Positions 13,057 through 47,367 of a stretch of DNA of 64,000 nt are shown here, piece by piece. Under the pieces are notes generated by a model. That model saw only the letters and a program-made list of their open reading frames with translations, was not told where the DNA came from and did not search any database. The position numbers and the translations under genes are program-made. Origin of the DNA: Octopus sinensis (lineage: Eukaryota); contig NC_043007.1 of the NCBI RefSeq assembly GCF_006345805.1, forward strand, positions 1,116,001 through 1,180,000. The letters run 5' to 3'. The first letter of the stretch is position 1; each line of letters begins with the position of its first letter.

Positions 13057-13162
13057 ATGTATGTATGTATGTATGTATGTATGTATGTATGTATGTATGT
13101 ATGTATGTATGTATGTATGCATGTATGCATGTATGTATGTATTATGTATGTATGTATGTATG

Positions 13163-13195
<33 letters not shown>

Positions 13196-13960
13196 GCATG
13201 TATGCATGTATGTATGTATGTATGTTATGTATGTATGTATGTATGTATGTATGCATTATGTATGTAATGCATGTATGCATGTATGTATTATGTATGTATG
13301 TATGCATGTTGCATGTATGTATTATAGTATGTAATGTATGTATGCATGTATGCATGTATGTATGTAATTATGTATGTATGTATGTATGTATGTATGTAGT
13401 TGTATGCAATGTATGTATGTATGCATGTATGCATGTATATGTATGTATGGTATGTATGTATGTATTATGCATGTATGTATGTATGCCATGTATGTCTGTT
13501 ATGTATTATGTATGTATGTATGTATGTATGTATATGTATGTATGTATGTATGTATGCATGTATGTATGTTTTATGTATGTATGTATGTATGTATGTATGT
13601 ATGCATGCATGCATGTATGTATGTAATGTATGTATGTATGTATGTATTATGCATGTATGTATTATGTATGTATGTATGCATGTATGTATGTATGTATGTA
13701 TGTATGTATGTATGTTGTTATGCATGCATGCATGTTTTATGTATGTCTGTATGCATGTAATGTATGTTATGTATGTATGTATGTAATGTATGTATGTAAT
13801 GTATGTATGCATGCATGCATGTATGTATGTATGTATGTATGTATGCATGCATGCATGTATGTATGTATGTATGTATGTATGCATGTATGTATGTATGTAT
13901 GCATGTATGTATTATGTATGTATGTATGTATGTATGTATGTATGTATGTATGTATGTATG

Positions 13961-13994
<34 letters not shown>

Positions 13995-14010
13995 TGTATG
14001 TATGTACGTA
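13057..14010 (+). repeat. (TATG)n array, about 950 bp
   Basis: Direct reading of the sequence. Confidence 0.97.
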
Positions 14011-14905: not shown

Positions 14906-15110
14906 TGTTTTTGCTCCCCTCACCATCATGTGACAACCGATGTTGGTGTGTTTACGTCCCACTAAACTAGCGGTTCAGCATAAGAGATCGATATACTAAG
15001 TATCAGGCTTACGAAGAATAAGTCCTGGGGTCGATTTCTTCGACTAAAAAGGCAGTGCTCCAGCATGGCCGCAGTCTCGTGACTGAAACAAGTAAAACAG
15101 TAAAAGAGAT
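14600..15110 (+). mobile_element. Two tandem 5'-truncated family A SINE copies
   Basis: ACTTAGCGGTTC...GGTGCCCCAGCATGGCCG..GACTGAAAC body and tail occur twice. Confidence 0.7.
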
Positions 15111-15764: not shown

Positions 15765-16210
15765 TTGGCAGAATCGTCAGAACGTCAGACACAATGCTTT
15801 GCAACATTGCTTCCGGCTCATTACGATCTAAGTTCAAATCTCGCCGAGATGAATTTGACTTTTAATCTTTTCGGGGGTCGATAAAATAAAGTATCAGTCA
15901 AATAATGGAGCCGATGGTATCGTCTGTCTTACCCCAACCCTCGTATTTCCTGCTCTTTTACTTCAATCAGAAATTATTACTCTCCGGCTCTAAGGCAGCG
16001 AGCTGGCAGAATCGTTAGCACGCCCGGGCAAAATGCTTGGCGGCATTTCATAAGTTTTTACGTCCTGAGTTCAAATTCCACTGAGGTCGGCTTTGCCTTT
16101 CATCCTTTCATGGTCGATAAAATAAGTACCAGTAAAACACTGGGGTCGATGTTATCGACTTATCCCCTCCTACCAAATGGCTGCCCTTGTGCCTCAATCA
16201 GAAATTATTA
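15765..16210 (+). mobile_element. Two family B SINE copies
   Basis: GGCAGAATCGT..AG head and GTTCAAAT.C B-box occur twice. Confidence 0.7.
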
Positions 16211-16436
16211 TTCTTCGGCTCTTTACGTTTCGAGTTCAAATCCTAACAAGGTTTACTTTGCCTCTAATCATTTCGGCATCGTTAAAAAAATTATGAATCC
16301 AAATCACTGGATCAGCGGAACTGTAAAATCGTTGGATTGGATCCTTGAGCAAAACACTTCATTTCACTTTGCTTTTTGTCCACTCGGCTGGCAAAATTGA
16401 GCAACCCTGTAACAAACCGGCGTCCTGCCCGTCCAA

Positions 16437-18212: not shown

Positions 18213-18462
18213 GCACAGGAACACGCACATGCACACACACATGCACAGGAACACGCACACGTGCATACGTACACACACACGCACGCATGCATACATGCCC
18301 GTCACCCGCGCACGCACACGTTGAAGCACGGTCAGCCACAAACCGTACGGAAGACCCTATGAAAGGGACAACAATAAAATGTTGCTTCATTAAAAACACT
18401 TCTCTTCGTATGAACTTGAACCCTTGAGCATTCAAATTGCTCTGTCAAATGTAACGTTTGTT

Positions 18463-19058
18463 TATTACCTCCGCCCGCCTTAGCGAAGGCGGAGGTATTG
18501 TTTTCAGTTACGTTTGTTTGTTTGTCCGCGGACACGATATCTCAAGAACCGCTGGATAGATTCCAATGAAACTTTCAGGGATGTTTGGCCACGTGACTGG
18601 CACGAACCGTTTAGATTTTGGGATCGATCCGGTACCGGACAAGGATTCTGGATGTTTTGTTATATTTACTTTACAGGGTTACGATCTTACGTTAACTTTG
18701 AAGTCTTTCTCAATTACGCCCCTTTAGACTAACTATTTCGAATGATGAATTTGTTAACGTTGGCTTGTATTAGATAAGGATAAACTATTTATTACTGTTA
18801 CTAACTTTTCTACACCCACCTTCACATTCCATGACTACCATTGGGATCGATCAGGTACCGGACAAGGATTCTGGATTATTTTTCCGGGTATTTTTCTACT
18901 TAATTTTTGAGAGAGGTCGAGTTCATTTTTAGTATTCTCGTTTGTGAGAGCAGTCGAGTTTATTTCAGATATTCTCATTTTAAAAATCATCTCTGGCTAA
19001 TCGTTGAGAGGACGTTGGTGTCGCCTTGGCGGAGGTCTGCGCTCTCTGAGTGCCTCTT
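18463..19058 (+). mobile_element. Helentron-associated non-autonomous element (HINE/DINE-1-like architecture)
   Basis: 5' ACCTCCGCC (18467-18475) with its inverse GGCGGAGGT (18488-18496). 3' subterminal GGCGGAGGT (19028-19036), then a short hairpin GCGCTC-TCT-GAGTGC, with T-rich flanks. A second copy lies at 31175-31745. Confidence 0.65.
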
Positions 19059-19466
19059 ATTATTTATTTATTTATTTTAAAAATTATTGCAATCCACGAT
19101 GCTTTCATAACACGCGTTCGTAGGTACGCTACTTAATTTCCGATTCCCCATCTACAGGAATGCCCACTGATGTTAATGGCAATAACGGTGATATAAATTT
19201 CGCGCTAAAACAAATTGATATATTCAAATGACAGTGTCATACACGCAGTCCTTATTTGTCCTCATTGGCAGAGTTTTTCAAGTGGTTGAAGGAAGCATTC
19301 GGAAAAGAAGAAAAAAGCAAAATTAGAATTTAAGAAATGAAAACTGTTGATTTTAAGATTAAACTTTATTGTTTCGTGGAATACATTGGGTTTATGTTTA
19401 AGCTAATCGCTGAGAGGACATTGGTGTTGCCTTGGCGGAGGTCTGCGCTCTATTAGCACTCTTGTT
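19059..19466 (+). mobile_element. Extension of the HINE-like element ending in a second 3' terminus
   Basis: 19403-19466 duplicates 18997-19058. 19059-19402 is shared with 30833-31174. Confidence 0.6.
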
Positions 19467-24078: not shown

Positions 24079-24145
24079 TCCACCACCTACACCACCAAAC
24101 GGTATATACAGGTGCTTACAATTATCAAGTACTCACCCTGAATTT

Positions 24146-25310
24146 ATGTATGTATGTATGTATGTATGTATGTATGTATGTATGCATGTATGCATGCATG
24201 TATGCATGTATGAATGTATGTATGTATGTATGTATGTATGTATGTATGTATTTATGTATGTATGTGTGTATGTGTGTATGTGTGTGTGTATGTATGTATG
24301 TATGTATGTATGTATGTATGTATGTATGTATGTATGTGTGTATGCATGTATGTATGTATGTATGTATATATGTATGTATGTATGTATGCATGCATTCATG
24401 TATGTATGTATGTATGTATGAATGTGTGTATGTATGTATGCATGCATGTATGTATGTATGAATGTATGTATGCATGTATGCATGCATGTATGTATGTATG
24501 AATGTATGTATGAATGTATGTATTTATGTATGTGTGTGTGTATGTATGTATGTATGTATGTATGTATGTATGTATGAATGTGTGTATGTATGTATGAATG
24601 TATGTATGAATGTGTGTATGTATGTATGTGCATGTATGCATGTATGTATGCATGTATGTATGCATGTATGAATGTATGTATGTATGTATGCATGTATGCA
24701 TGTATGCATGCATGTATGCATGTATGAATGTATGTATGTATGTATGTATGTATGTATTTATGTATGTATGTGTGTATGTGTGTATGTGCGTGTGTATGTA
24801 TGTATGTATGTATGTATGTATGTATGTATGTATGTGTGTATGCATGTATGTATGTATGTATGTATATATGTATGTATGTATGTATGCATGCATTCATGTA
24901 TGTATGTATGTATGTATGAATGTGTGTATGTATGTATGCATGCATGTATGTATGTATGAATGTATGTATGAATGTATGTATTTATGTATGTGTGTGTGTA
25001 TGTATGTATGTATGTATGTATGTAGTATGAATGTGTGTATGTATGTATGAATGTATGTATGAATGTGTGTATGTATGTATGTGCATGTATGCATGTATGT
25101 ATGCATGTATGTATGCATGTATGAATGTATGTATGTATGCATGTATGCATGTATGCATGCATGCATGCATGCATGTATGTATGTATGTATGTATGTATGT
25201 ATGTATTATGTATGTATGTATGCATGTATGTATGTATTATGTATGTATGAATGCATGCATGTATGTATGAATGTATGTATGTATGTATGTATGTAGTGTG
25301 TAGGTATGTA
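24146..25310 (+). repeat. (TATG)n array with an internal duplication of about 500 bp
   Basis: Direct reading. Diagnostic variants (TTTA, GCATTCATG) recur about 500 bp apart. Confidence 0.93.
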
Positions 25311-27049
25311 TGTATGTGTGCACTTTCGTATATACGTATAAAACTAGCAGAAAACTGCGTGACACAAGAGTGTCGACTGCTCATTAACATATCATCCCAG
25401 ACATCTATCAATGGGCTACATCAAGTCTCTTTCTCATACCACTCAGATTATGTATATACACCTTCCTAATTAGCAAGGTAGAGAGTCAGATAGGTGGTTA
25501 TCTTATATCATTATAAATATTTATAAGTTGAAAAGCTACAAATAAAACCCCATTTAAATCTCACTTCACTTTACTTATTCTAATTGCAAATCTATCATAC
25601 GAAGGGAAATAAATCAAACATTTCTTTAATTTGTACTTACCTCCCCTGATCGGTTTTAGTAAAATGTGTAAAACAAACTGAACGCTATTTTTTCTGCCTT
25701 CCTTCAAATGCCTCATTAGTGTTTTTATACAATATAATAACTGCACAAAACGATTAGCAATTGTTTTATATCAGAAATACATTATATTAACCACTAAAAG
25801 TCTGGTATTGAGGGTACTCTATATACATATTTACTTTCTTGCACACGATTCTAGATTCTAACGGGTGCAAATGCTAAAATAGTAAAGACTGGTGAAGCCG
25901 TCTTTAGCGATTAATAATTGGGGGAAGTTTCGGATTTTATGCACATTGCAATGTTGTAAATTATATCCATGTTGTATAACATTTTATTTTAAACAAAACT
26001 GTTCACTTTTTATTGAAAATAGAAGAGTATGACAATTAGTCAAGTCCATGCTTAAAACAAATGGAATTTTTTCAAAGTAGCAATAAAATAAATCAATGGA
26101 GGAAAGAAAGGAACAGCATAAATACGTCGTTTGAACAGATACGCCATATTCAAGGAAGGGATTAGAGCGTTCGACTTGTTGGATCTTTCAAAATAGATTT
26201 TAAAATACCATCTTCAGATTGTATCGTGCTTTTACATCATTTGATGTTGAATGGTGAGGAACGATAATGCACTCGGATTTTGCAAAAAAAAAAAAAATAA
26301 AATAAAATAAAATAAAAATTTGCAAAAGGAAAAATAAGAATGATTTTCCGTTCTTTGATAACCTGTCGAACTTGAACTCTTTAAAAAGAAATCCTGTAGA
26401 AAATAATCGGGAATATTCTCTACAAAATAGATATATATTGAGCAGAAAATATTGATAATTTAATAACAATGATTTAGACACTTCTACACAGATTTAGGAA
26501 AATGGGAAACAAGATGAATAAGTAATTGATGGAGCAAAGTAAGAAATAAGATACAGACTACATTACAAAGATATAGATTACAAATCTGTCAAAAGTGAAA
26601 TCAGTCTGCAAATCCATGATTAGTCAATGGTGATAAAACTTACTGGAAGCAATCAAACGATAAGCTAACTTTAATCAGTCTTTAATCTCCCCAATATGTC
26701 AACCATATCTGGTAACGTATAAAACATATCTGACACCTGGTAGGTTTAATAAATGAAGACTTTTGTTGGCTTCAAACGGGCTGCATTCCTTTGGGTTGCA
26801 TTCTTTAGAATACAGATCGCATGGAATCACATTTATGGTATTATGGAGAATACGCAGACACTTTATATTATCTGTTCCAATGCAAAAATTACAAGTCTGG
26901 TCTTTAAACCGTGGTCAAGTTTCAAGGGCCAATTTAATATCAAGGATCCACTAGCCTTAAGCAATTTCCTTCACTTCATGGAGCCCCCCGCCCAAAGATT
27001 TAACTGCAAAAGTAATTGATTTGTTTATATATAATTATTTTATCTTTTC

Positions 27050-27422
27050 TTTTTTAATTCTTTTACTTGTTTCAATCATTTGACTGCGGCCATGCTGGAG
27101 CACCGGCTTTAGTCGAACAAATCGACCCCAGGACTTATTCTATCGGTCTCTTTTGCCGAACCGCAAAGTTACGGTGACGTAGACATACCAACATCGGTTG
27201 TCAAGTGATGGCGGGGTGGGGTGTCAAATAGACACACACACACACATACACACACACACACACACGATGAGCCTCTTTCAGTTTCCCTCTACCAAATCCA
27301 CTCACAAGGTTTTGGTCGGCCTGAGGCTATAGTAGAAGTCACTTGCCCAAGTGTCACACAGTGGGACTGAACCCGGAACCATGTGGTTGGGAAGCAAGCT
27401 TTTTACCACACAGCCACGCCTG
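27050..27422 (-). mobile_element. Family A SINE
   Basis: Same consensus as 2493-2930, reverse complemented. Confidence 0.78.
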
Positions 27423-29622: not shown

Positions 29623-29834
29623 GTTCATTGGCTGTGTGGTAAGAAGCTTGCTTACCAACCACCTGGTTCTGGGTTCAGTCCCACTGCGTGGCACCTTGGG
29701 CAAGTGTCTTCTGAGTGGATTTGGTACTAGGCTTACAATGTATAAGTTCTAGGGTCGATTTGTTTGACTAAAGGCGGTGCTCCATCATGGCCGCAGTCAA
29801 ATTACTGAAACAAGTAAAAGAATAAAACATTATT

Positions 29835-30715: not shown

Positions 30716-30832
30716 AAAGGCGGTCACCTTCACTCACGCGTGCGCGCACACACAACAGAAAACCCTTGAAAGAGGTGCTCCAGCCTGGTCGCAGTCCAAT
30801 GACTGAAACAAGCCAAGAATAAAATTCAAATG

Positions 30833-31745
30833 CCTTAAACATAGACCCATTGTATTCCACGAAACAATAAAGTTTAATCTTTGAAATCAACAGTTTTCAT
30901 TTCTTAAATTTTAATTTTGCATTTTTTTTCTTTTCCGAATGCTTCCTTCAACCACTTGAAAAACTCTGCCAATGAGGACAAATAAGGACTGCGTGTATGT
31001 CACTGTCATTTGAATATATCAATTTGTTTTAGCGCGAAATTTATGTCACCGTTATTGCCATTAACATCAGTGGGCATTCCTGTAGATGGGGAATCGGAAA
31101 TTAACTAGCGTACCTACGAACGCGTGTTATGAAAGCATCGTGGATTGCAATAAGTCAATAAATAAATAAATAATAAGAGGCACTCAGAGAGCACAAACCT
31201 CCGCCAACGCAACACCAACGTCCTCTCAACAATTAACTGGAGATGATTTTTAAAATGAGAATATCTGAAATACACTCGACTGCTCTTACAAACGAGAATA
31301 CTAAAACTGAACCCGACCTCTCTCAAAAATTAAGGCCGGAAAAATAAGCCAGAATCCTTGTCCGGTACCTGATCGATCACAATGGTAGTCATGAAACGTG
31401 AAGGTGGCTGTAGAAAATTTAGTAACAGTAATAAATAGTCTATCCTTATCTAATACAATAAATTCACCATTCAAAATAGTTACAGCCTAAAGGGAGATAA
31501 TTGAGAAAGACTTCAAAGATAACGTAAGATCGTCATCATGTAAAGTAATTATAACAAATAATCCAGAACCCTTGTACGGTACCGGATCGATCCCAAAATG
31601 TAATCAGTTCGTGTCAATCATGACGCCAAACATCCCTGAAAGTTTCACTTGAATTTATCCAATGGTTCTTGAGACATCTTGTCCACAGACAAACAAACAC
31701 GACTGAAAACAATACCTCCGGCTTCGCTAAGGCGGAGGTAATAAA
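30833..31745 (-). mobile_element. Second HINE-like element plus shared 3' flank
   Basis: Reverse complement of 18463-19402 throughout, with the same subterminal repeats and 3' hairpin (31175-31205). Confidence 0.65.
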
Positions 31746-32719
31746 ATAAAACGACTTTTTGGCTATTTTGGGGCAAGAGAGGGCTTTTGTTTTGTCAATT
31801 CCTTATTTAATAACAAAGCGAACTTAGTGGTAAAACCTACAGACGGAGAAGAACATACTACCACCACATTCTTAATGATTAAATTAACCTCTCTGTATAT
31901 ATGTCTACCCTCTTTGTAATGTTGGCAAATATATAAAAATATGCATTGTCAGTTTAATTGAAAGATTCTATATGTGGCTGAAGATTGCTCGACATTTTAA
32001 AACTGATGTAATACTTACATTGTTTAATAAAATGAAGTAGCATGAAACGATTGTACTACACCACCTTGGATATCTTTGTTGCTTATTTTGATTATAATCA
32101 CCCCATTTGATTTATATAGATAATACCATACCAAATTCTGGTGCCTTTAACTTAAGTACCATATTCATCTGAATCTAAATTTTGCTGAACTTATATATAT
32201 ATATAAGGACGTTTGAAATAGTAGCTACGAGTGTAATGGGTAGGACTGTTATACAAGTTTGACTTTGTGCAGACATCCTAGTATGCAGTCCTACAAATTA
32301 TACTCACCTGGACGGTCGTACCGATGATCTACAGAGAATTATGTAATTTGTTGATAGTGAAACATGTATACGAATAATCCATATTTTTATTACTTTTTCT
32401 TTTGTCTTGCTCGATTACGTTTTGGTTGTTTTGCTAAATTTTTCTTGAGAACATTTCTTGGTGGTGAGACCGCAGCGGATCTATTTCTAGCATATGGGTG
32501 TCCACATAGGGGTTTCCCTCCCTTTCTCTCTATATATATGTATGTATGTATGTATATGCTTGTATGTATGAGTCTCACGAAAGGCAAGGTTTGGTTTTAT
32601 TTTTTCTAGAATTAATACAAAGCTGTTTCGGTGTTAGTGTTATGGGTGGGAACCAGTGAAAAGGTCACACGAGTTTAATGAAATGCATTGACAAAATAAT
32701 CACTTTGTTAATAAATTCA

Positions 32720-33071: not shown

Positions 33072-33544
33072 CTAGAAAGCAGAGAGAAAACAAGGAGGAT
33101 TATTTCATTAAAATGGTTACGTGAGACAGAGGTTAAATTCTGTTAGGAAAATTGTTTCTACTTCTGGTACTATGGCAGTGATTTTGCCTGGAGGGGCAGG
33201 TCGTTGGCATTACTTTTCTAGCATGGGTAAAGTAAGTACCAGGATCAACTGATACTTATTTGGCCCTCACCAGAAGGATGAAAAGTAAAGCCAACGTCGG
33301 TGGAATATGAACTCAGAACGTTAAAAGGCGGAAGTAAGGTCAACTAAATTTTTTTGTGTCCGCTGCTTTAACGATTGCACCAGTTTGACACCTCCAAATC
33401 TTACTATAAATATATACGATTAAAACTTTTGCTTGTCCTGTGTATCATATACGATACACAGGACATATTTCCCTAGTGGCCATGCATAATATATGATTCT
33501 CGGCGTTTTATCGTGTGTCCCATAATTTATTTGGTTTCTTCTTG

Positions 33545-33992
33545 ACCACTGCCTCTGATGACTAAAAAGGCCGATTTTTGCATGGAAGCGTCTGTTGCAA
33601 AGTTCACAGGGGATCTGTGGTAGAGGATTTGGTTGATACAGCCTCCATTTTCTTTCTTGTCGTTTCTCTTCCTCTTTCCTCTGTCGTTCAGTTTCAAAAT
33701 GATTTGTCACAGCGGAGATGGAATGATGCCAGTCGGGCCTGTCCTGAGCTTCTATGTCCCAGGCTTTGGGATCGATTCCAGTCATCTTTAGGCTTTGCTT
33801 CAACTGATCCTTGTATCGACGGAGGTGACGGCCACGGCGTCTTCTTCCAGTGGAAAATTCACTATTTAAAATTTGACGCGGCAGCCTGGTTTCTTCCATC
33901 CTTGTCACGTGGCTCGACCATCTCAGATGTTTTGGGATGGTAGCCTCGATACTGTTGCTTTTCGTTCTTTCCAAAACGGAGACATCGGTCAC
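33545..33992 (-). pseudogene. RTE-clade LINE 3' coding fragment
   Basis: LRWSSHVTRMEETRLPRQILNSEFSTGRRRRG..LRRYKDQLK..L..GID...W...AQDR..W, and a terminal zinc finger CELC..F..KIGLFSHQR. Confidence 0.85.
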
Positions 33993-35266: not shown

Positions 35267-35505
35267 CTTCTTTGAGTCTCAAGTTCTTCGTGAGAGAGTT
35301 CAAGCCGGTTGCTAACAAAGCGACGAAACATTCGGAGTTGAGAGAGTTCCCGGTGTTTGTAAATATGAGGATGAGTTCTAGAGTGCTGGTTGAACCGTCG
35401 ATACATACACCCAAAGTGGGTGCATCTATTCACACAAGAATTTTTGGAATGTTTTGCAAACCTTCACTGTGCTACAAAGAAATAGAATTTGGAGAATCCA
35501 CTGAG
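35260..35505 (-). mobile_element. RLE-type LINE 3' end, divergent subfamily (copy D)
   Basis: ILQILFLCSTVKVCKTFQKFLCE*, then a different UTR. (CATA)n lies on the 5' side and (CA)n on the 3' side. Confidence 0.5.
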
Positions 35506-36860
35506 TATGTATGTATGTATGTATGTATGTATGTATGTATGTATGTATGTATGTATGTATGTATGTATGTATGTATGTATGTATGTATGTATGTATGTAT
35601 GTATGTATGTATGCATGATGTATGTATGTATGTATGTATGTATGCATGTATGTATGTATGTATGCATGTATGTATGTATGTATGTATGTAGGATGTATGT
35701 ATGTATGTATGTATGTATGTATGTATGTATGTATGTATGTATGTATGTATGAATGTATGTATGTATGTATGTATGCATGTATGTATGTATGTATGTATGT
35801 ATGTATGTATGTATGTATGTATGTATGTATGTATGTATGTATGTATGTATGTATGTATGTATGTATGTATGTATGTATGTATGTATGTATGTATGCATGT
35901 ATGTATGTATGTATGCATGTGTATGTATGTATGCATGTATGTGTGTATGTATGTATGTATGTATGTATGTATGCATGTATGTATGTATGTATGCATGTAT
36001 GTATGTATGTATGTATGTAGGAATGTATGTATGTATGTATGTGATGTATGTATGTAGTATGTATGTATTTATGTATGCATGTATGTATGTATTATGATGT
36101 ATGTATGTATGTATGTATGCATGTATGTATGTATGTATGTATGTATGTATGTATGCATGTATGTATGTATGAATGTATGTATGTATGTATGTATGTATGT
36201 ATGTATGTATGTATGTATGCATGTATGTATGTATGTATGCATGTATGTGTGTATGTATGTATGTAGGAATGTATGTATGTATGTATGCATGCATGTATGT
36301 GTGTATGTATGTATGTATGTATGTAGGAATGTATGCATGCATGTATGTGTGTATGTATGTATGTATGTATGTATGTAGGAATGTATGTATGTATGTATGT
36401 ATGTATGTATGTATGTATGTTTGTATGTATGTATGCATGTATGTATGTATGTATGCATGTATGTATGTATGTATGTATGCATGTATGTATGTATGTATGT
36501 ATGTAGGAATGTATGTATGTATGTATGTAGGAATGTATGTATGTATGTATATATGTATGTATGTATGTATGCATGCATTCATGTATGTATGTATGTATGT
36601 AGGAATGTATGTATGTATGTATGTATCTATGTATGCATGCATGCATGCATGCATGTATGTATGTATGTATGTATGTATGTATGCATGTATGTATGCATGC
36701 ATTCATGCATGCATGTATGTATGTATGTATGCATGTATGTATGTATGTATGCATGCATGTATGTATGTATGTATGTATGCATTTATGTATGCATGTATGT
36801 ATGTATGTATGTATATATATACGTATGTATGTATGCATGTATGTATGTGTGTGTATGTAT
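35506..36860 (+). repeat. (TATG)n array, about 1.35 kb
   Basis: Direct reading of the sequence. Confidence 0.97.
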
Positions 36861-36884
36861 GTAGAAAGATGAGGGAGAGAGATA

Positions 36885-37190
36885 TGGGGAAACAGTGAAA
36901 TAGATGCAGTTAAAACTGAGTGAAGATGTATATACAGTTTCTATAGATATAAAAGTACAATATAATCGTGAAATCTCGTCGTACGCAACCCGAGTATAAA
37001 CGCATGACGTCACAAATGTCAATGTATTTAAGAGTCTTTGTTTTTCTTGTAATGTGAGTTAAATGAAAACAAGATATTATTTGTAGAATCGCTTTGGGTG
37101 TTTCACTGGATATGTGACACGTTTACTGACATCTGTGAGAATAAGCGAAAATAAAATAGAAATTAGGACGGATAAGTTCGGTGTGCGTGT
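36885..37190 (+). repeat. Unclassified repeat of about 310 bp, copy 1 (copy 2 at 39185-39500)
   Basis: Shared blocks ATATAAAAGTACAA, TCGTGAAATCTCGTC, GCAACCC.AGTATAAA and CATCTGTGAGAATAAG occur in the same order. Confidence 0.7.
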
Positions 37191-37399
37191 TCTTGGCTGA
37201 GAATGAGCACCAGACAAACACTAAGCCTAGCACTTTCTTCCCTCAGCTTCTCGGCTTCCCCGCGAGGTCGGGGAAGTCGAGAAGCTGTTTGTGTCTGCCC
37301 GCAATGTGCAAACGCACCGAACATAATAACAGAATAACCGAATAACAGAACAAGCGAAAGCGTGGTACATGTGAGGGAGTCTAACGACGATTGACTCAT

Positions 37400-38871
37400 T
37401 CGTATGTATGTATGTATGTATGCATGTATGTATGTATGTATGTATGTATGTATGTATGTATGTATGTATGTATGTATGTATGCATGCATGCATGTATGTA
37501 TGTATGTATGTATGTATGTATGTATGTATGTATGCATGTATGTATGTATGTATGTATGTATGTATGTATGCATGTATGTATGTATGTATGTATGTATGTA
37601 TGTATGCATGCATGCATGCATGCATGTATGTATGTATGTATGTATGTATGTATGTATGTATGCATGCATGTATGTATGTATGTATGTATGTATGTATGTA
37701 TGTATGTATGCATGTATGTATGTATGTATGTATGTATGTATGAATGTATGTATGTATGTATGTATGTATGTATGTATGTATGCATGTATGTATGTATGCA
37801 TGCATGCATGCATGCATGTATGTATGTATGTATGTATGTATGCATGTATGTATGTATGTATGTATCTATGTATGTATGTATGTATGTATGTATGTATGTA
37901 TGAATGTATGTATGTATGTATGTATGAATGTATGTATGTATGTATGTATGTATGTATGCATGTATGTATGTATGTATGTATGTATTTATGTATGTATGTA
38001 TGTATTTATGTATGTATGTATGTATGTATGTATGTATGTATGTATGTATGTATGTATGCATGCATGCATGCATGCATGTATGTATGTATGTATGTATGTA
38101 TGTATGTATGTATGCATGCATGTATGTATGTATGTATGTATGTATGTATGTATGTATGTATGTATGTATGTATGTATGTATGTATGTATGTATGTATGCA
38201 TGCATGTATGTATGTATGTATGCATGTATGTATGTATGAATGTATGTATGTATGAATGTATGTATGTATGTATGTATGTATGTATGTATGTATGTATGTA
38301 TACATGTATGCATGCATGCATGCATGCATGCATGTATGTATGTATGTATGTATGTATGTATGTATGTATGAATGTATGTATGTATGAATGTATGTATGTA
38401 TGTATGTATGTATGCATGTATGTATGTATGTATGTATGTATGTATGTATGTATTTATGTATGTATGTATTTATGTATGTATGAATGTATACATGTATGTA
38501 TGTATGTATGTATGTATGCATGCATGTATGTATGTATGTATGTATTTATGTATGTATGCATGTATGTATGCATGTATGTTTGTATGTATGTATTTATGTA
38601 TGTATGTATGTCATTATTCAGTTTTATTCCAAGATTTCTTGCAATAGAGAAAGGGCCGGTTTCTAACATGTATGTATGTATGTATGTTTGTATGTATGTA
38701 TGTATGTATGTATGTATGTATGAATGTATGCATGTATGTATGTATGTATGTATGTATGTATGTATGTATGTATGTATGCATGCATGTATGTATGTATGTA
38801 TGTATTTATGTATGTATGCATGTATGTATGCATGTATGTTTGTATGTATGTATTTATGTATGTATGTATGT
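37400..38871 (+). repeat. (TATG)n array, about 1.45 kb, containing a duplicated LINE terminus at 38611-38669
   Basis: Direct reading of the sequence. Confidence 0.95.
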
Positions 38872-43610: not shown

Positions 43611-43987
43611 GGAAGAAACGGTTTCAAGTTGAGAATGTGATAATATTGTGTTTATTTTTATGACCGATATTTACAAGGCGGGAGTGTCATGGGTGGAGAA
43701 ATAATCTAGGTAGGAAATTAGGCAGAAATATATAAGAAATGTGGGAGCGCGGGTGGGTGGGTGGTGCCGAATACATTAATATATGGAAATACTGTTAATT
43801 TTAGGTTTTGTTAAAGTTGTATTCAATTTCGACATTTCAAAGATTGATTACCAAATCTTTTATCATTTATGCTTAGCTTGATTCAGTCATTGGACTGCAG
43901 CCATACCAGAAAGCCGCTTTCATGGGTTTAGTCGGACAAATTGACCCCAGAACTGAATTGTTTAAGACTGGTGTTTACTAAAATAAG

Positions 43988-44320: not shown

Positions 44321-45167
44321 GCAATGTTCAACTTTGCAATGACCACCTTAGAAATGCTCAACTTCGTAATAATCAGCTTTGTAATGATCAACTTCGTAAT
44401 GATCAACTTCGTAATGATCAACTTCGTAATGATCAACTTTGTAATGATCAACTTTGTAATGATCAACTTTGTAATGCTCAACTTCGTAATAATCAATTTT
44501 GTAATGATCAACTTCGTAATGATCAACTTTGTAATGATCAACTTTATAATGATCAACTTTGTAATGATCAACTTTGTAATGATCAACTTTGTAATGATCA
44601 ACTTCGTAATGATCAACTTTGTAATGATCAATTTTGTAATGATCAACTTTGTAATGATCAACTTTGTAATGCTCAACTTTGTAATGATCAACTTTGTAAT
44701 GATCAACTTTGTAATGATCAACTTTGTAATGATCAACTTTGTAATGATCAACTTTGTAATGCTCAACTTTGTAATGATCAACCATGTAATGATCAACTTT
44801 GTAATGATCAACTTTGTAATGATCAACTTTGTAATGCTCAACTTTGTAATGATCAACTTTGTAATGATCAACTTTGTAATGATCAACTTTATAATGATCA
44901 ACTTCGTAATGTTCAACTTTGTAATGATGAACTTTGTAATGCTCAACTTTGTAATGATCAGCTTTGTAATGATCAACTTTGTAATGATCAACTTCGTAAT
45001 GATCAACTTCGTAATGATCAACTTTGTAATGATCAACTTTGTAATGATGAACTTTGTAATGCTCAACTTCGTAATAATCAACATTGTAATGATCAATTTT
45101 GTAATGACCAGCATATGAACTGATTGACTTTGTAAATGAATATTCAATTCCATAATGATCAACTTAC
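44321..45167 (+). repeat. 15-bp minisatellite GTAATGATCAACTTY, about 52 units plus degenerate units reaching the splice donor
   Basis: Direct reading of the sequence. Confidence 0.95.
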
Positions 45168-46139: not shown

Positions 46140-46375
46140 AACGACGGCGAGCTGGCAGAAACGTTATCACGCCCGGCGAAATGCTTAGCGGTATTTCGTC
46201 TGCCGCTACGTTCTGAGTTCAGATTCCGCCAAGGTCAACTTTGTCTTTCATCCTTTCGGGGTCGATTAAATAAGTACCAGTTACGCACTGGGGTCGATAT
46301 AATCGACTTAATCCGTTTGTCTGTCCTTGTTTGTCCTCTCTGTGTTTAGCCCCCTGTGGGTAGTAAAGAAATAAA
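46140..46375 (+). mobile_element. Family B SINE, near full length
   Basis: GGCGAGCTGGCAGAAACGTTA...GTTCTGAGTTCAGATTCCG...GGGTAGTAAAGAAATA. Confidence 0.78.
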
Positions 46376-47367
46376 TATTTTGGCTAATATATTTAGTGAA
46401 ACACTGTCTCCTAATATAAATTTGTTTGCATAAAAAAGGGGCACCCCGTCAGTTAAAATGACGAGGGTTCCAGTTGATACGATCAACGGAACAGCTTGCT
46501 CGTGAAATTAATGTGCAAGTGGCTGAGCACTCCGCAGACATGTATACCCTTATCGTAGTACTCAGGGAGGTTCAGCATGATACAGGGTGGTGGACTATTG
46601 GAATGTTTGGCACATGGGACGGGTATCATGCAGTATCCGTTCCGGTTCTTTGTGTTCTGAGTTCGAATCCAGCCGTGATCGACTTAATCCGCCACTGTCT
46701 AACTCCACTACACCCTGGTACTTTGTGTGTCCCTAACAGAAGACTCCACTCTATTGTAAGCATTTGAATTAGATTTCCAGTTTGAGGATATTTTCTTCCT
46801 TCCCTCTTTTGAGCTTTGGATGCCCTGAAAAATGTCAGGTATACAGTCCTGGCCCTTCTCTAAGAAATATAAGCAGGCATCCTTCAAATCACAAATTGCC
46901 ATCGTAAAATAAGAATGACTCAAGATTTTGAATGGAATAGTCAACACGTTTTAGTATAGGTACAAGACCTGTAATTTGGGGGGAATGGATTAATCGATTA
47001 CACTAACTCCAGTACACAACTGGTATTTATTTTAAGGATGAAAGGTAAAGTCGACCTGAAGAGTAACTATTACTCTCTGAAGGCCTTCCATGGGAAGAAG
47101 AGAAGTCGTGCTCGAATCAAAGATTAAGTTGGTACGACTGCTTCAAACAGAGCGGAATTCACAAAATCATCTCACAAGGCCCAAATGACGGTGTTGAACA
47201 AGGCGACGAATTAAGTTTACGGATAATCTTATTCGGGGTATACAGAAAGGAACAAAAATGTATTATTACGCATCTACCGAACAGGGAGCAGGGTTAACTC
47301 AGGGATAAACAACGATAAAAGCTGGTCTTTTAGTTGTACTGAACCGTTAAATTAAAAATCAACATAC

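What the first reader, a model, noticed from the sequence alone, without database searches (positions are those of the whole stretch)
18463..19466. Helentron-like element with two 3' ends and about 340 bp of captured flank shared with a second copy
Seen: after the first 3' end (subTIR plus hairpin, 19028-19058) come 344 bp of unrelated sequence, then a second copy of the 3' end (19403-19466). The inverted copy at 30833-31745 carries the same element plus the same 344 bp, and the match stops exactly where the second 3' end begins. Known: rolling-circle elements can bypass their terminator and capture flanking DNA. Inference: this is a snapshot of end bypass, transduction and acquisition of a new terminus.
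Basis: partly seen in the sequence, partly recalled or inferred. Interest (0 to 1): 0.7.

Follow-up and report, generated by a model that had tools for sequence, protein, structure and literature searches.

The report
Rolling-circle transposon copies sharing captured flank
Two diverged copies of a small Helentron-type (HINE/DINE-1-like) rolling-circle transposon carry the same ~340 bp of unrelated DNA after a complete right end, which looks like a known kind of terminator read-through, so this is an ordinary though tidy example and not a new mechanism.

Summary
Window 18461-19402 (+) matches 31745-30834 (-) at 89% over 945 bp. The 66-bp right-end module 18996-19061 recurs at 19402-19466. The homology between the two loci stops within 1 nt of that second module, and neither side shares any further flank.

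The ~600-bp element has HINE (non-autonomous Helentron) anatomy: a 5' subTIR with its complementary repeat forming a strong hairpin, a GT-rich microsatellite, a 37-bp central tandem repeat, and a 3' subTIR followed by a short palindrome. It has T-rich junctions and no target-site duplication. Two marine metagenome contigs carry relatives with the same ends.

The first right end is complete and abuts a (TTAT)n microsatellite, so the 340 bp behaves as former flanking DNA. Read-through (3' transduction) is the best explanation at about 0.55.

Three things are not shown:
- whether the 340 bp is rare or part of an established family consensus, because no genome-wide search was possible;
- which locus, if either, is the donor;
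- whether the second end was "acquired". Its palindrome is degenerate, and it may be a pre-existing 5'-truncated remnant.

One complication: identity rises from 87% (5' half) to 97% (captured part).

This is a known phenomenon in Helitrons and expected for HINEs. Interest is low to moderate.

The parts
18461..19061 (+). Element E, copy 1: ~600-bp non-autonomous HINE-like rolling-circle element (left flank module, core, central repeats, right flank module RF1)
   Evidence: Homology with copy 2 starts at 18461. The ends match the metagenome relatives L004 and L005.
18467..18496 (+). 5' subTIR ACCTCCGCC plus complementary inverted repeat GGCGGAGGT, forming the left-end hairpin
   Evidence: The pattern matches twice in the window against 0 expected. 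DNA fold -14.3 kcal/mol, z = -6.3.
18506..18527 (+). GT-rich (GTTT)n microsatellite-like stretch after the hairpin, as in HINE left flanks
   Evidence: Read. The relatives have (GTCT)n at the same place. HINE definition from PMC7492417.
18618..18653 (+). Internal 36-bp repeat, first copy; the second copy is at 18841-18876 (97% identical). It lies in the core stretch that also aligns with L004.
18903..18980 (+). Central tandem repeat, 37 bp x 2.1
   Evidence: TRF score 98, 78% matches.
18996..19061 (+). RF1, the first right-end module: 3' subTIR 19028-19036, palindrome 19039-19053, terminus CTCTTATT
   Evidence: Three copies in the window. Aligns with the 3' end of L005 through GAGTGC plus about 8 nt.
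19062..19402 (+). F, copy 1: ~340 bp of AT-rich (33% GC) non-coding DNA unrelated to E. It begins with (TTAT/ATTT)n and is the putative transduced flank.
   Evidence: 96.7% identical to copy 2. No similarity to E or its relatives. No open frame longer than 46 codons, and copy 2 adds stops. No Rfam or tRNA hit.
19402..19466 (+). RF2, a solo second right-end module (subTIR 19434-19442). Its first 50 nt are 94% identical to RF1. Its tail is diverged and its palindrome degenerate.
31172..31745 (-). Element E, copy 2 (inverted, 11.4 kb away). It has lost 10 CpGs, against 1 lost in copy 1.
30834..31171 (-). F, copy 2. It ends at ...GTTTAAG with no right-end module after it.
   Evidence: RF searches found no further copy. 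No downstream homology over 1.5 kb.
30760..30824 (-). 65-bp fragment of an unrelated multi-copy SINE-like repeat, 10-13 bp beyond the end of F at locus 2. It is context, not part of the element.

Best explanation
E is a non-autonomous Helentron-type rolling-circle element (a HINE/DINE-1-like element).

Proposed history:
1. At some source locus E sat in a T-rich (ATTT)n site.
2. In one round of rolling-circle transposition the transposase started at E's left end and failed to stop at the right-end signal RF1 (subTIR plus short palindrome).
3. It ran about 340 bp into the flank (F) and ended at an unmarked site (...GTTTAAG).
4. The resulting E+F unit is now present at two places 11.4 kb apart in opposite orientation. 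Locus 2 may itself be the source, or both may derive from a third locus.
5. At locus 1 the E+F unit lies directly against a solo 66-bp right-end module (RF2) of a somewhat different subtype. Most likely RF2 is a pre-existing 5'-truncated remnant beside which E+F landed. It could now serve as a replacement terminator.

Shown: the anatomy, the exact shared boundaries and the absence of further shared flank.
Inferred: read-through as the copying mechanism, the direction of events and any function of RF2.
For: 1. HINE anatomy:
- 5' subTIR 3-6 nt from the homology boundary, with a complementary repeat forming a strong hairpin;
- GT-rich microsatellite after the hairpin, and a 37-bp central tandem repeat;
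- 3' subTIR complementary to the 5' one, followed by a 6-bp palindrome 8 nt from the end;
- no target-site duplication and T-rich junctions.
These match the definitions in PMC4067079 and PMC7492417.

2. Independent relatives in JGI metagenome contigs share the left hairpin, the core motif and the whole right-end module. This fixes E's ends independently of the two window copies.

3. RF1 is complete up to the conserved terminus position and is followed by (TTAT)4.5. That is what an element/target junction looks like.

4. The E/F junction is the same in both copies. Homology begins at E's left end and ends at the same base of F. The flanks are unrelated (upstream p = 0.3-0.5; no hit within 1.5 kb downstream).

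5. F is unrelated to E and non-coding.

6. Read-through with flank transduction has been demonstrated experimentally for a Helitron (about 12% of events), and de novo ends without palindromes are documented. So is insertion next to 5'-truncated copies (PMC4778049). Capture by HINEs is expected (PMC4067079).
Against: - Only two copies were available, and both E copies in the window carry F. That is also what an established composite family would give.
- Divergence between the copies is uneven: 87.3% (18463-18760), 93.1% (18761-19062) and 96.7% (F); 5' half vs F p = 1e-5, and p = 0.004 without CpG sites. Copy 2 lost 10 CpGs in E and none of the 12 in F. One unit of one age does not predict this. 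It needs an add-on such as gene conversion between the nearby inverted copies or conversion of the E part by other family members.
- Having E+F abut RF2 exactly requires either a targeted or lucky insertion, or some other origin.
- The subTIRs are only 9 bp, against 11-15 bp in described HINEs.
- No autonomous partner was seen.
Confidence: 0.55

Rival explanations
1. F is simply an internal part of an established composite HINE family with the structure left flank - core - RF - F - RF. The window holds two ordinary members, and copy 2 has lost its terminal right-end module or never had it. Any read-through that created the family is old, so this is not a 'snapshot'.
For: Both E copies in the 64-kb window carry F. 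HINEs are modular, and each family is a different combination of flanks and internal segments (PMC7492417). RF2 starts at the boundary of the right-end module that is conserved across species.
Against: Copy 2 would have to be truncated within 1 nt of the start of RF2, which is a coincidence. RF1 is a full terminus followed by a T-rich microsatellite, as at a true element end. The RF2 tail and palindrome are degenerate.
Confidence: 0.25
2. The two loci arose by a local inverted DNA duplication, for example a replication template switch or repair event, and not by transposition. Later gene conversion between the inverted arms produced the identity gradient.
For: The copies are only 11.4 kb apart and inverted. 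Identity peaks at 98-99% in the middle of F and falls on both sides, like a conversion tract. HINE-like elements are known to sit at duplication breakpoints in Drosophila (PMC4067079).
Against: One breakpoint falls exactly at E's structurally defined left end, and the other falls at the first base of a right-end module. No other collinear homology lies around the loci.
Confidence: 0.12
3. F is a separate, younger mobile sequence that inserted independently, at the same T-rich site just after RF1, into two older E copies.
For: F is three times less diverged than E, and none of its 12 CpGs has decayed in copy 2 whereas E lost 10.
Against: F has no convincing terminal repeats, no target-site duplication, and no other copy in the window. 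The junction is identical in both copies apart from a 4-nt indel in the microsatellite. The 3' half of E barely differs from F once CpG sites are removed (p = 0.23).
Confidence: 0.05

Closest known systems
HINEs (Helentron-associated interspersed elements: HINE-Mo of the mite Metaseiulus, Drosophila DINE-1/INE-1, oyster Cg_HINE)
   Same: A 5' subTIR close to the left end with a complementary repeat forming a hairpin, then a GT-rich microsatellite. Central tandem repeats. A ~60-bp right flank with a 3' subTIR followed by a short palindrome. T-rich insertion sites, no TSD and no coding capacity.
   Different: The subTIR is only 9 bp (11-15 bp described). The 3' subTIR lies 25 nt from the end (38-60 in HINE-Mo). 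No sequence match to published subTIRs was found in the supplements searched. No autonomous Helentron with these ends was seen.
Helitron 3' end bypass and transduction, and de novo 3' ends (Helraiser; HelibatN541/542/580 in Myotis)
   Same: A precise left end, the original right end retained internally, downstream flank carried along, and a new end with no palindrome. Composites next to 5'-truncated copies also occur (PMC4778049).
   Different: Those are canonical Helitrons (5' TC / 3' CTRR, AT target), not Helentron-type elements. In those cases donor loci and empty sites were identified; here they could not be.
IS91-family one-ended transposition in bacteria
   Same: HUH rolling-circle elements that miss their terminator and co-mobilise adjacent DNA (mentioned in PMC4778049).
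   Different: Prokaryotic, protein-coding elements. This is only a mechanistic analogy.

Membership tests
HINE (non-autonomous Helentron) | 5' subterminal inverted repeat a few nt from the left terminus | tested here: met
   ACCTCCGCC lies at 18467-18475. Homology between the copies starts at 18461-18463. Relatives L004 and L005 have the same arrangement.
HINE (non-autonomous Helentron) | Inverted repeat complementary to the subTIR within the left flank (palindromic left end), 1-12 bp away | tested here: met
   Hairpin at 18467-18496, -14.3 kcal/mol, z = -6.3. Copy 2: -8.6 kcal/mol, z = -4.0. The outer 9-bp arms are 12 nt apart (8 nt in copy 2).
HINE (non-autonomous Helentron) | Microsatellite (often GTCY-type) following the left-flank repeat | tested here: met
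   (GTTT)3-like run at 18506-18527. The relatives have (GTCT)n there.
HINE (non-autonomous Helentron) | 3' subTIR complementary to the 5' subTIR, 11-15 bp | tested here: inconclusive
   GGCGGAGGT at 19028-19036 is perfectly complementary, but only over 9 bp.
HINE (non-autonomous Helentron) | Short palindrome (5-10 bp) after the 3' subTIR, 8-35 bp from the right terminus | tested here: inconclusive
   GCGCTC-TCT-GAGTGC at 19039-19053, 8 nt from the end, has one G:T and a centroid of only -3.2 kcal/mol. The 81-nt stretch folds no better than its shuffles. The palindrome is weakened in copy 2 and in RF2.
HINE (non-autonomous Helentron) | Insertion in T-rich sequence with no target-site duplication | tested here: met
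   Both 5' flanks end in T runs. RF1 is followed by (TTAT)4.5. There is no direct repeat across any candidate pair of boundaries.
HINE (non-autonomous Helentron) | Autonomous Helentron (Rep/helicase/endonuclease) in the same genome sharing the termini | not testable with these tools
   The source genome could not be reached. The window holds no Rep/helicase ORF.
Rolling-circle 3' transduction (end bypass) | Copies share a precise left end and the original right end, plus a downstream segment, with no homology beyond | tested here: met
Rolling-circle 3' transduction (end bypass) | The transduced segment matches a donor locus where it continues into unique flank, and most family members lack it | not testable with these tools
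   All DNA and protein routes to other copies returned nothing.
TIR-type MITE | Terminal inverted repeats flanked by a target-site duplication | tested here: not met
   The repeats are subterminal. Homology among the three right ends runs 25 nt past the repeat. No TSD is present.
Segmental duplication | Shared sequence extends beyond the transposon on at least one side | tested here: not met
   Upstream flanks are unrelated (p = 0.3-0.5). The 1.5 kb downstream shows no significant hit.

The most novel reading that the evidence does not exclude
The two loci really are successive stages in the birth of a new HINE family: read-through, capture of 340 bp, then recruitment of a fresh right-end module. 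In addition, the copy-specific direct repeats flanking each 5' hairpin would reflect a homology-guided integration step. In that step the element's post-hairpin microsatellite pairs with a similar T-rich target. This has not been described for Helentrons.
Probability: 0.1. Interest if true: 0.55.

Novelty: new member of a known kind. Interest (0 to 1): 0.3.

Why it matters
Read-through capture is how rolling-circle transposons shuffle host DNA and make new families. It is well documented for canonical Helitrons, but for Helentron-type HINEs it is mostly assumed. If genome-wide data confirm it, a clean E+F pair with a retained internal terminus would be a concrete HINE example. It would also be a handle on how the modular combinations of left flank, insert and right flank arise in mollusc-type HINEs. 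It changes no current understanding.

Tried and rejected
1. Reaching other copies in the source genome. All routes failed:
- Protein-word searches with two element ORFs gave no candidates.
- Exact look-up of 10 window ORFs found none in the collection.
- DNA pattern scans of viral, metagenome and prokaryote collections with the right-end motif, an F 24-mer and the SINE motif all gave 0.
- Only the 5'-hairpin pattern found relatives, two real and one chance hit, L003.

2. A LINE RT ORF search to identify the organism. The best hit was 74% identical, on an unnamed ENA contig, and the DNA was 75.7% identical. The organism remains unverified. The SINE-like repeat reminds me of octopus repeats, but that is memory only.

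3. F as an RNA gene or coding fragment: no Rfam or tRNA hit, and no conserved frame.

4. F as a MITE: only chance-level 12-nt inverted repeats.

5. F as a diverged copy of the E core, which would make a tandem dimer: no similarity.

6. Nested insertion into another full E: the upstream flank shows no E core, and there is no further RF near copy 2.

7. Homology resuming beyond RF2 or beyond the SINE fragment: none.

8. Literature search for the terminal sequences: none found.

Full report
**Observation**

The window is animal-type DNA, rich in simple repeats, with LINE fragments and a 100-N gap.

- 18461-19402 on the plus strand matches 31745-30834 on the minus strand at 89.3% over 945 columns.
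- 19402-19451 repeats 18996-19045 at 94%. With laxer scoring this extends to 19466/19061 at 86%.
- In the pairwise alignment the two loci part company after ...TATGTTTAAG. Copy 1 goes on with CTAATCGCTGAGAGG..., the second right end. Copy 2 goes on with unrelated sequence.
- The window holds no third copy of the element or of the ~340-bp segment.

**What the element is**

The ~600-bp element E (18461-19061) has the following parts, in order.
- It starts with TTTATT and the 9-nt ACCTCCGCC (18467-18475).
- A 12-nt spacer follows, then the complement GGCGGAGGT. Together they form a strong hairpin (-14.3 kcal/mol, z = -6.3; copy 2 z = -4.0). The pattern occurs exactly twice in the window, against none expected.
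- Next come a (GTTT)n-like stretch, a core, and a 37-bp tandem repeat x2.1 at 18903-18980.
- The right-end module RF1 (18996-19061) holds GGCGGAGGT (19028-19036), complementary to the 5' repeat.
- RF1 then has a 6-bp palindrome GCGCTC-TCT-GAGTGC (19039-19053) and the tail CTCTTATT.

This is the layout given for Helentron-associated elements.
- PMC4067079 describes subTIRs a few nt from the 5' end, a short palindrome 8-35 bp from the 3' end, T-rich targets and no TSD.
- PMC7492417 describes oyster Cg_HINEs with a left flank of subTIR, complementary IR and GTCY-type microsatellite, and a ~60-bp right flank of subTIR plus palindrome.

E departs from these descriptions in three ways. The subTIR is 9 bp instead of 11-15. 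The 3' subTIR lies 25 nt from the end. The 3' palindrome is thermodynamically weak and is eroded in copy 2.

**Independent support for the ends**

The only collection scan that found anything used the left-end hairpin pattern against JGI metagenome contigs. It returned three contigs.
- L004 has the hairpin, a GT-rich microsatellite and a stretch clearly homologous to E's core (ATATCTCAA...GGAT...TTAGATTTTGGNATYGATCCG).
- L005 holds a complete ~520-bp relative whose right end aligns with RF1 from TGAGAGGAC... through GGAGGT, the palindrome and GAGTGC plus about 8 nt.
- L003 is a GC-rich chance hit.

E's ends are therefore defined independently of the two window copies. The duplicated 66-bp block equals the conserved right-end module.

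**The 340 bp (F)**

F starts inside a (TTAT)4.5 / (ATTT)n microsatellite that abuts the complete RF1 terminus. That is the T-rich context in which HINEs insert.

F has these properties:
- It is 33% GC.
- It has no Rfam or tRNA match.
- It has no open frame over 46 codons, and copy 2 adds stops.
- Its inverted repeats are at chance level.
- It shows no similarity to E's core or to the relatives.

F therefore behaves as former flanking DNA.

**Is it a segmental duplication?**

The upstream flanks of the two loci are not similar (p = 0.3-0.5). Downstream, 1.5 kb on each side gives no significant match.

At locus 2, F is followed after 10-13 bp by a 65-bp fragment of an unrelated SINE-like repeat that has at least 10 copies in the window. 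No right-end module lies beyond it.

So the shared unit begins at E's structural left end and stops at one base of F. This is the signature of 3' transduction, not of a random duplication.

**Complications**

Identity between the copies is uneven.

| Region | Identity |
|---|---|
| 18463-18760 | 87.3% |
| 18761-19062 | 93.1% |
| F, overall | 96.7% |
| 19121-19308 | 98-99% |
| last 94 bp of F | 93.6% |

- The 5' half differs from F at p = 1e-5, or p = 0.004 without CpG sites.
- The 3' half differs from F at p = 0.04, or p = 0.23 without CpG sites.
- Copy 2 has lost 10 CpGs in E against 1 lost in copy 1, and none of the 12 CpGs in F.

One unit of one age does not predict this. Three readings could explain it: gene conversion between the nearby inverted arms, conversion of the E part by other family members, or different mutability. 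I could not separate them.

**The second right end**

RF2 begins at the boundary of the conserved module. Its first 50 nt differ from RF1 at 3 positions. Its last 15 nt differ at 6 (p = 0.003), although they are still more similar than chance (p = 0.007). The right arm of the palindrome is altered, so RF2 does not fold into the hairpin.

RF2 is therefore not a fresh duplicate of RF1. It looks like a right end of another subtype or an older remnant.

I considered the possible routes.
- If locus 1 were the donor, read-through should have ended after RF2, not before it.
- If the mobile unit were E+F+RF2, copy 2 would have to be truncated within 1 nt of the start of RF2.
- The route needing least coincidence is that E+F, ending at ...GTTTAAG, inserted next to a pre-existing 5'-truncated remnant.

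That last route is listed for bat Helitrons with de novo ends, alongside experimentally shown read-through in about 12% of Helraiser events and new ends lacking palindromes (PMC4778049). Locus 2 could itself be the donor. None of this can be decided with two copies.

**Known or new**

Read-through capture and composite ends are established for Helitrons. PMC4067079 expects them for HINEs, but few cases are documented there.

If, as I recall but could not verify, the SINE-like repeat marks an octopus genome, a recent annotation reports a Helitron expansion at JC distance ~0.09 (PMC13282606). That is in line with the ~10% divergence seen here.

My verdict is a new member of a known kind, an ordinary but neat example. 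The decisive genome-wide test is still to be done.

**Limits**

No tool reached the source genome. The copy number of E and F is therefore unknown.

Noticed in passing
window 18444-18460 vs 18506-18520; 31746-31762 vs 31690-31705 (minus strand): In each E copy, the 12-14 nt just upstream of the 5' hairpin resemble that copy's own sequence just after the hairpin. Copy 1 has GTAACGTTTGTT vs GTTACGTTTGTT. Copy 2 has AGTCGT-TTTATTT vs AGTCGTGTTTGTTT. Shuffle p is 0.002 and 0.007, and the genomic null gives 0.6-1.7% and 4-5%. Neither flank resembles the other copy's sequence, and the two upstream flanks do not resemble each other. The two metagenome relatives do not show this. It may be a preference for (GTTT)-like targets or something mechanistic.
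   Followed up: partly
window 18618-18653 and 18841-18876: A 36-bp piece of the cross-species conserved core (GGGATCGATCNGGTACCGGACAAGGATTCTGGAT) occurs twice inside E, 223 bp apart, at 97% identity. This is a second 'short repeat - unique - short repeat' structure, like RF1-F-RF2, and hints at an earlier internal rearrangement.
   Followed up: partly
window 30760-30824 and at least 9 other sites (e.g. 1450-1504, 2872-2928, 15055-15105, 27053-27104, 29771-29827, 43866-43929): An abundant SINE-like repeat with the consensus ...TTCTTTTACTTGTTTCAGTCATTTGACTGCGGCCATGCTGGAGCACCGCCTTTTAGTCGAACAAATCGACCCCAGGACTTATTC.... From memory it resembles the common octopus repeat. No tool or paper search confirmed the organism.
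   Followed up: partly
window 60480-64000; 35505-38871; 24145-25317; 13057-14010; 44323-45107: Very long simple-sequence arrays: (AAT)n of at least 3.5 kb running off the window end, (GTAT)n of 3.4 kb, further (TATG)n and (ATGT)n arrays, and a 15-bp minisatellite x52.
   Followed up: no
window 10245-11824 (+), 33420-33992 (-), 59132-59830 (+): Decayed LINE reverse-transcriptase and C-terminal fragments. The closest database protein is 74% identical, on a 767-bp ENA contig (DNA 75.7% identical). The other listed hits are 43-57% identical, on long eukaryote-like ENA contigs (one Logan).
   Followed up: partly
window 7426-9104, 16024-16215, 46145-46380, 51206-51429: Another ~160-236-bp dispersed repeat family with at least 6 copies in both orientations (76-91% identity). 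It is unrelated to the finding.
   Followed up: no
L004 1790-1850 and L005 (rc) 1441-1740: The metagenome contigs that carry the HINE relatives are themselves animal-like DNA. L004 has a (GTCC/GTCT)n run, and L005 has a LINE RT-like stretch downstream of the element.
   Followed up: no
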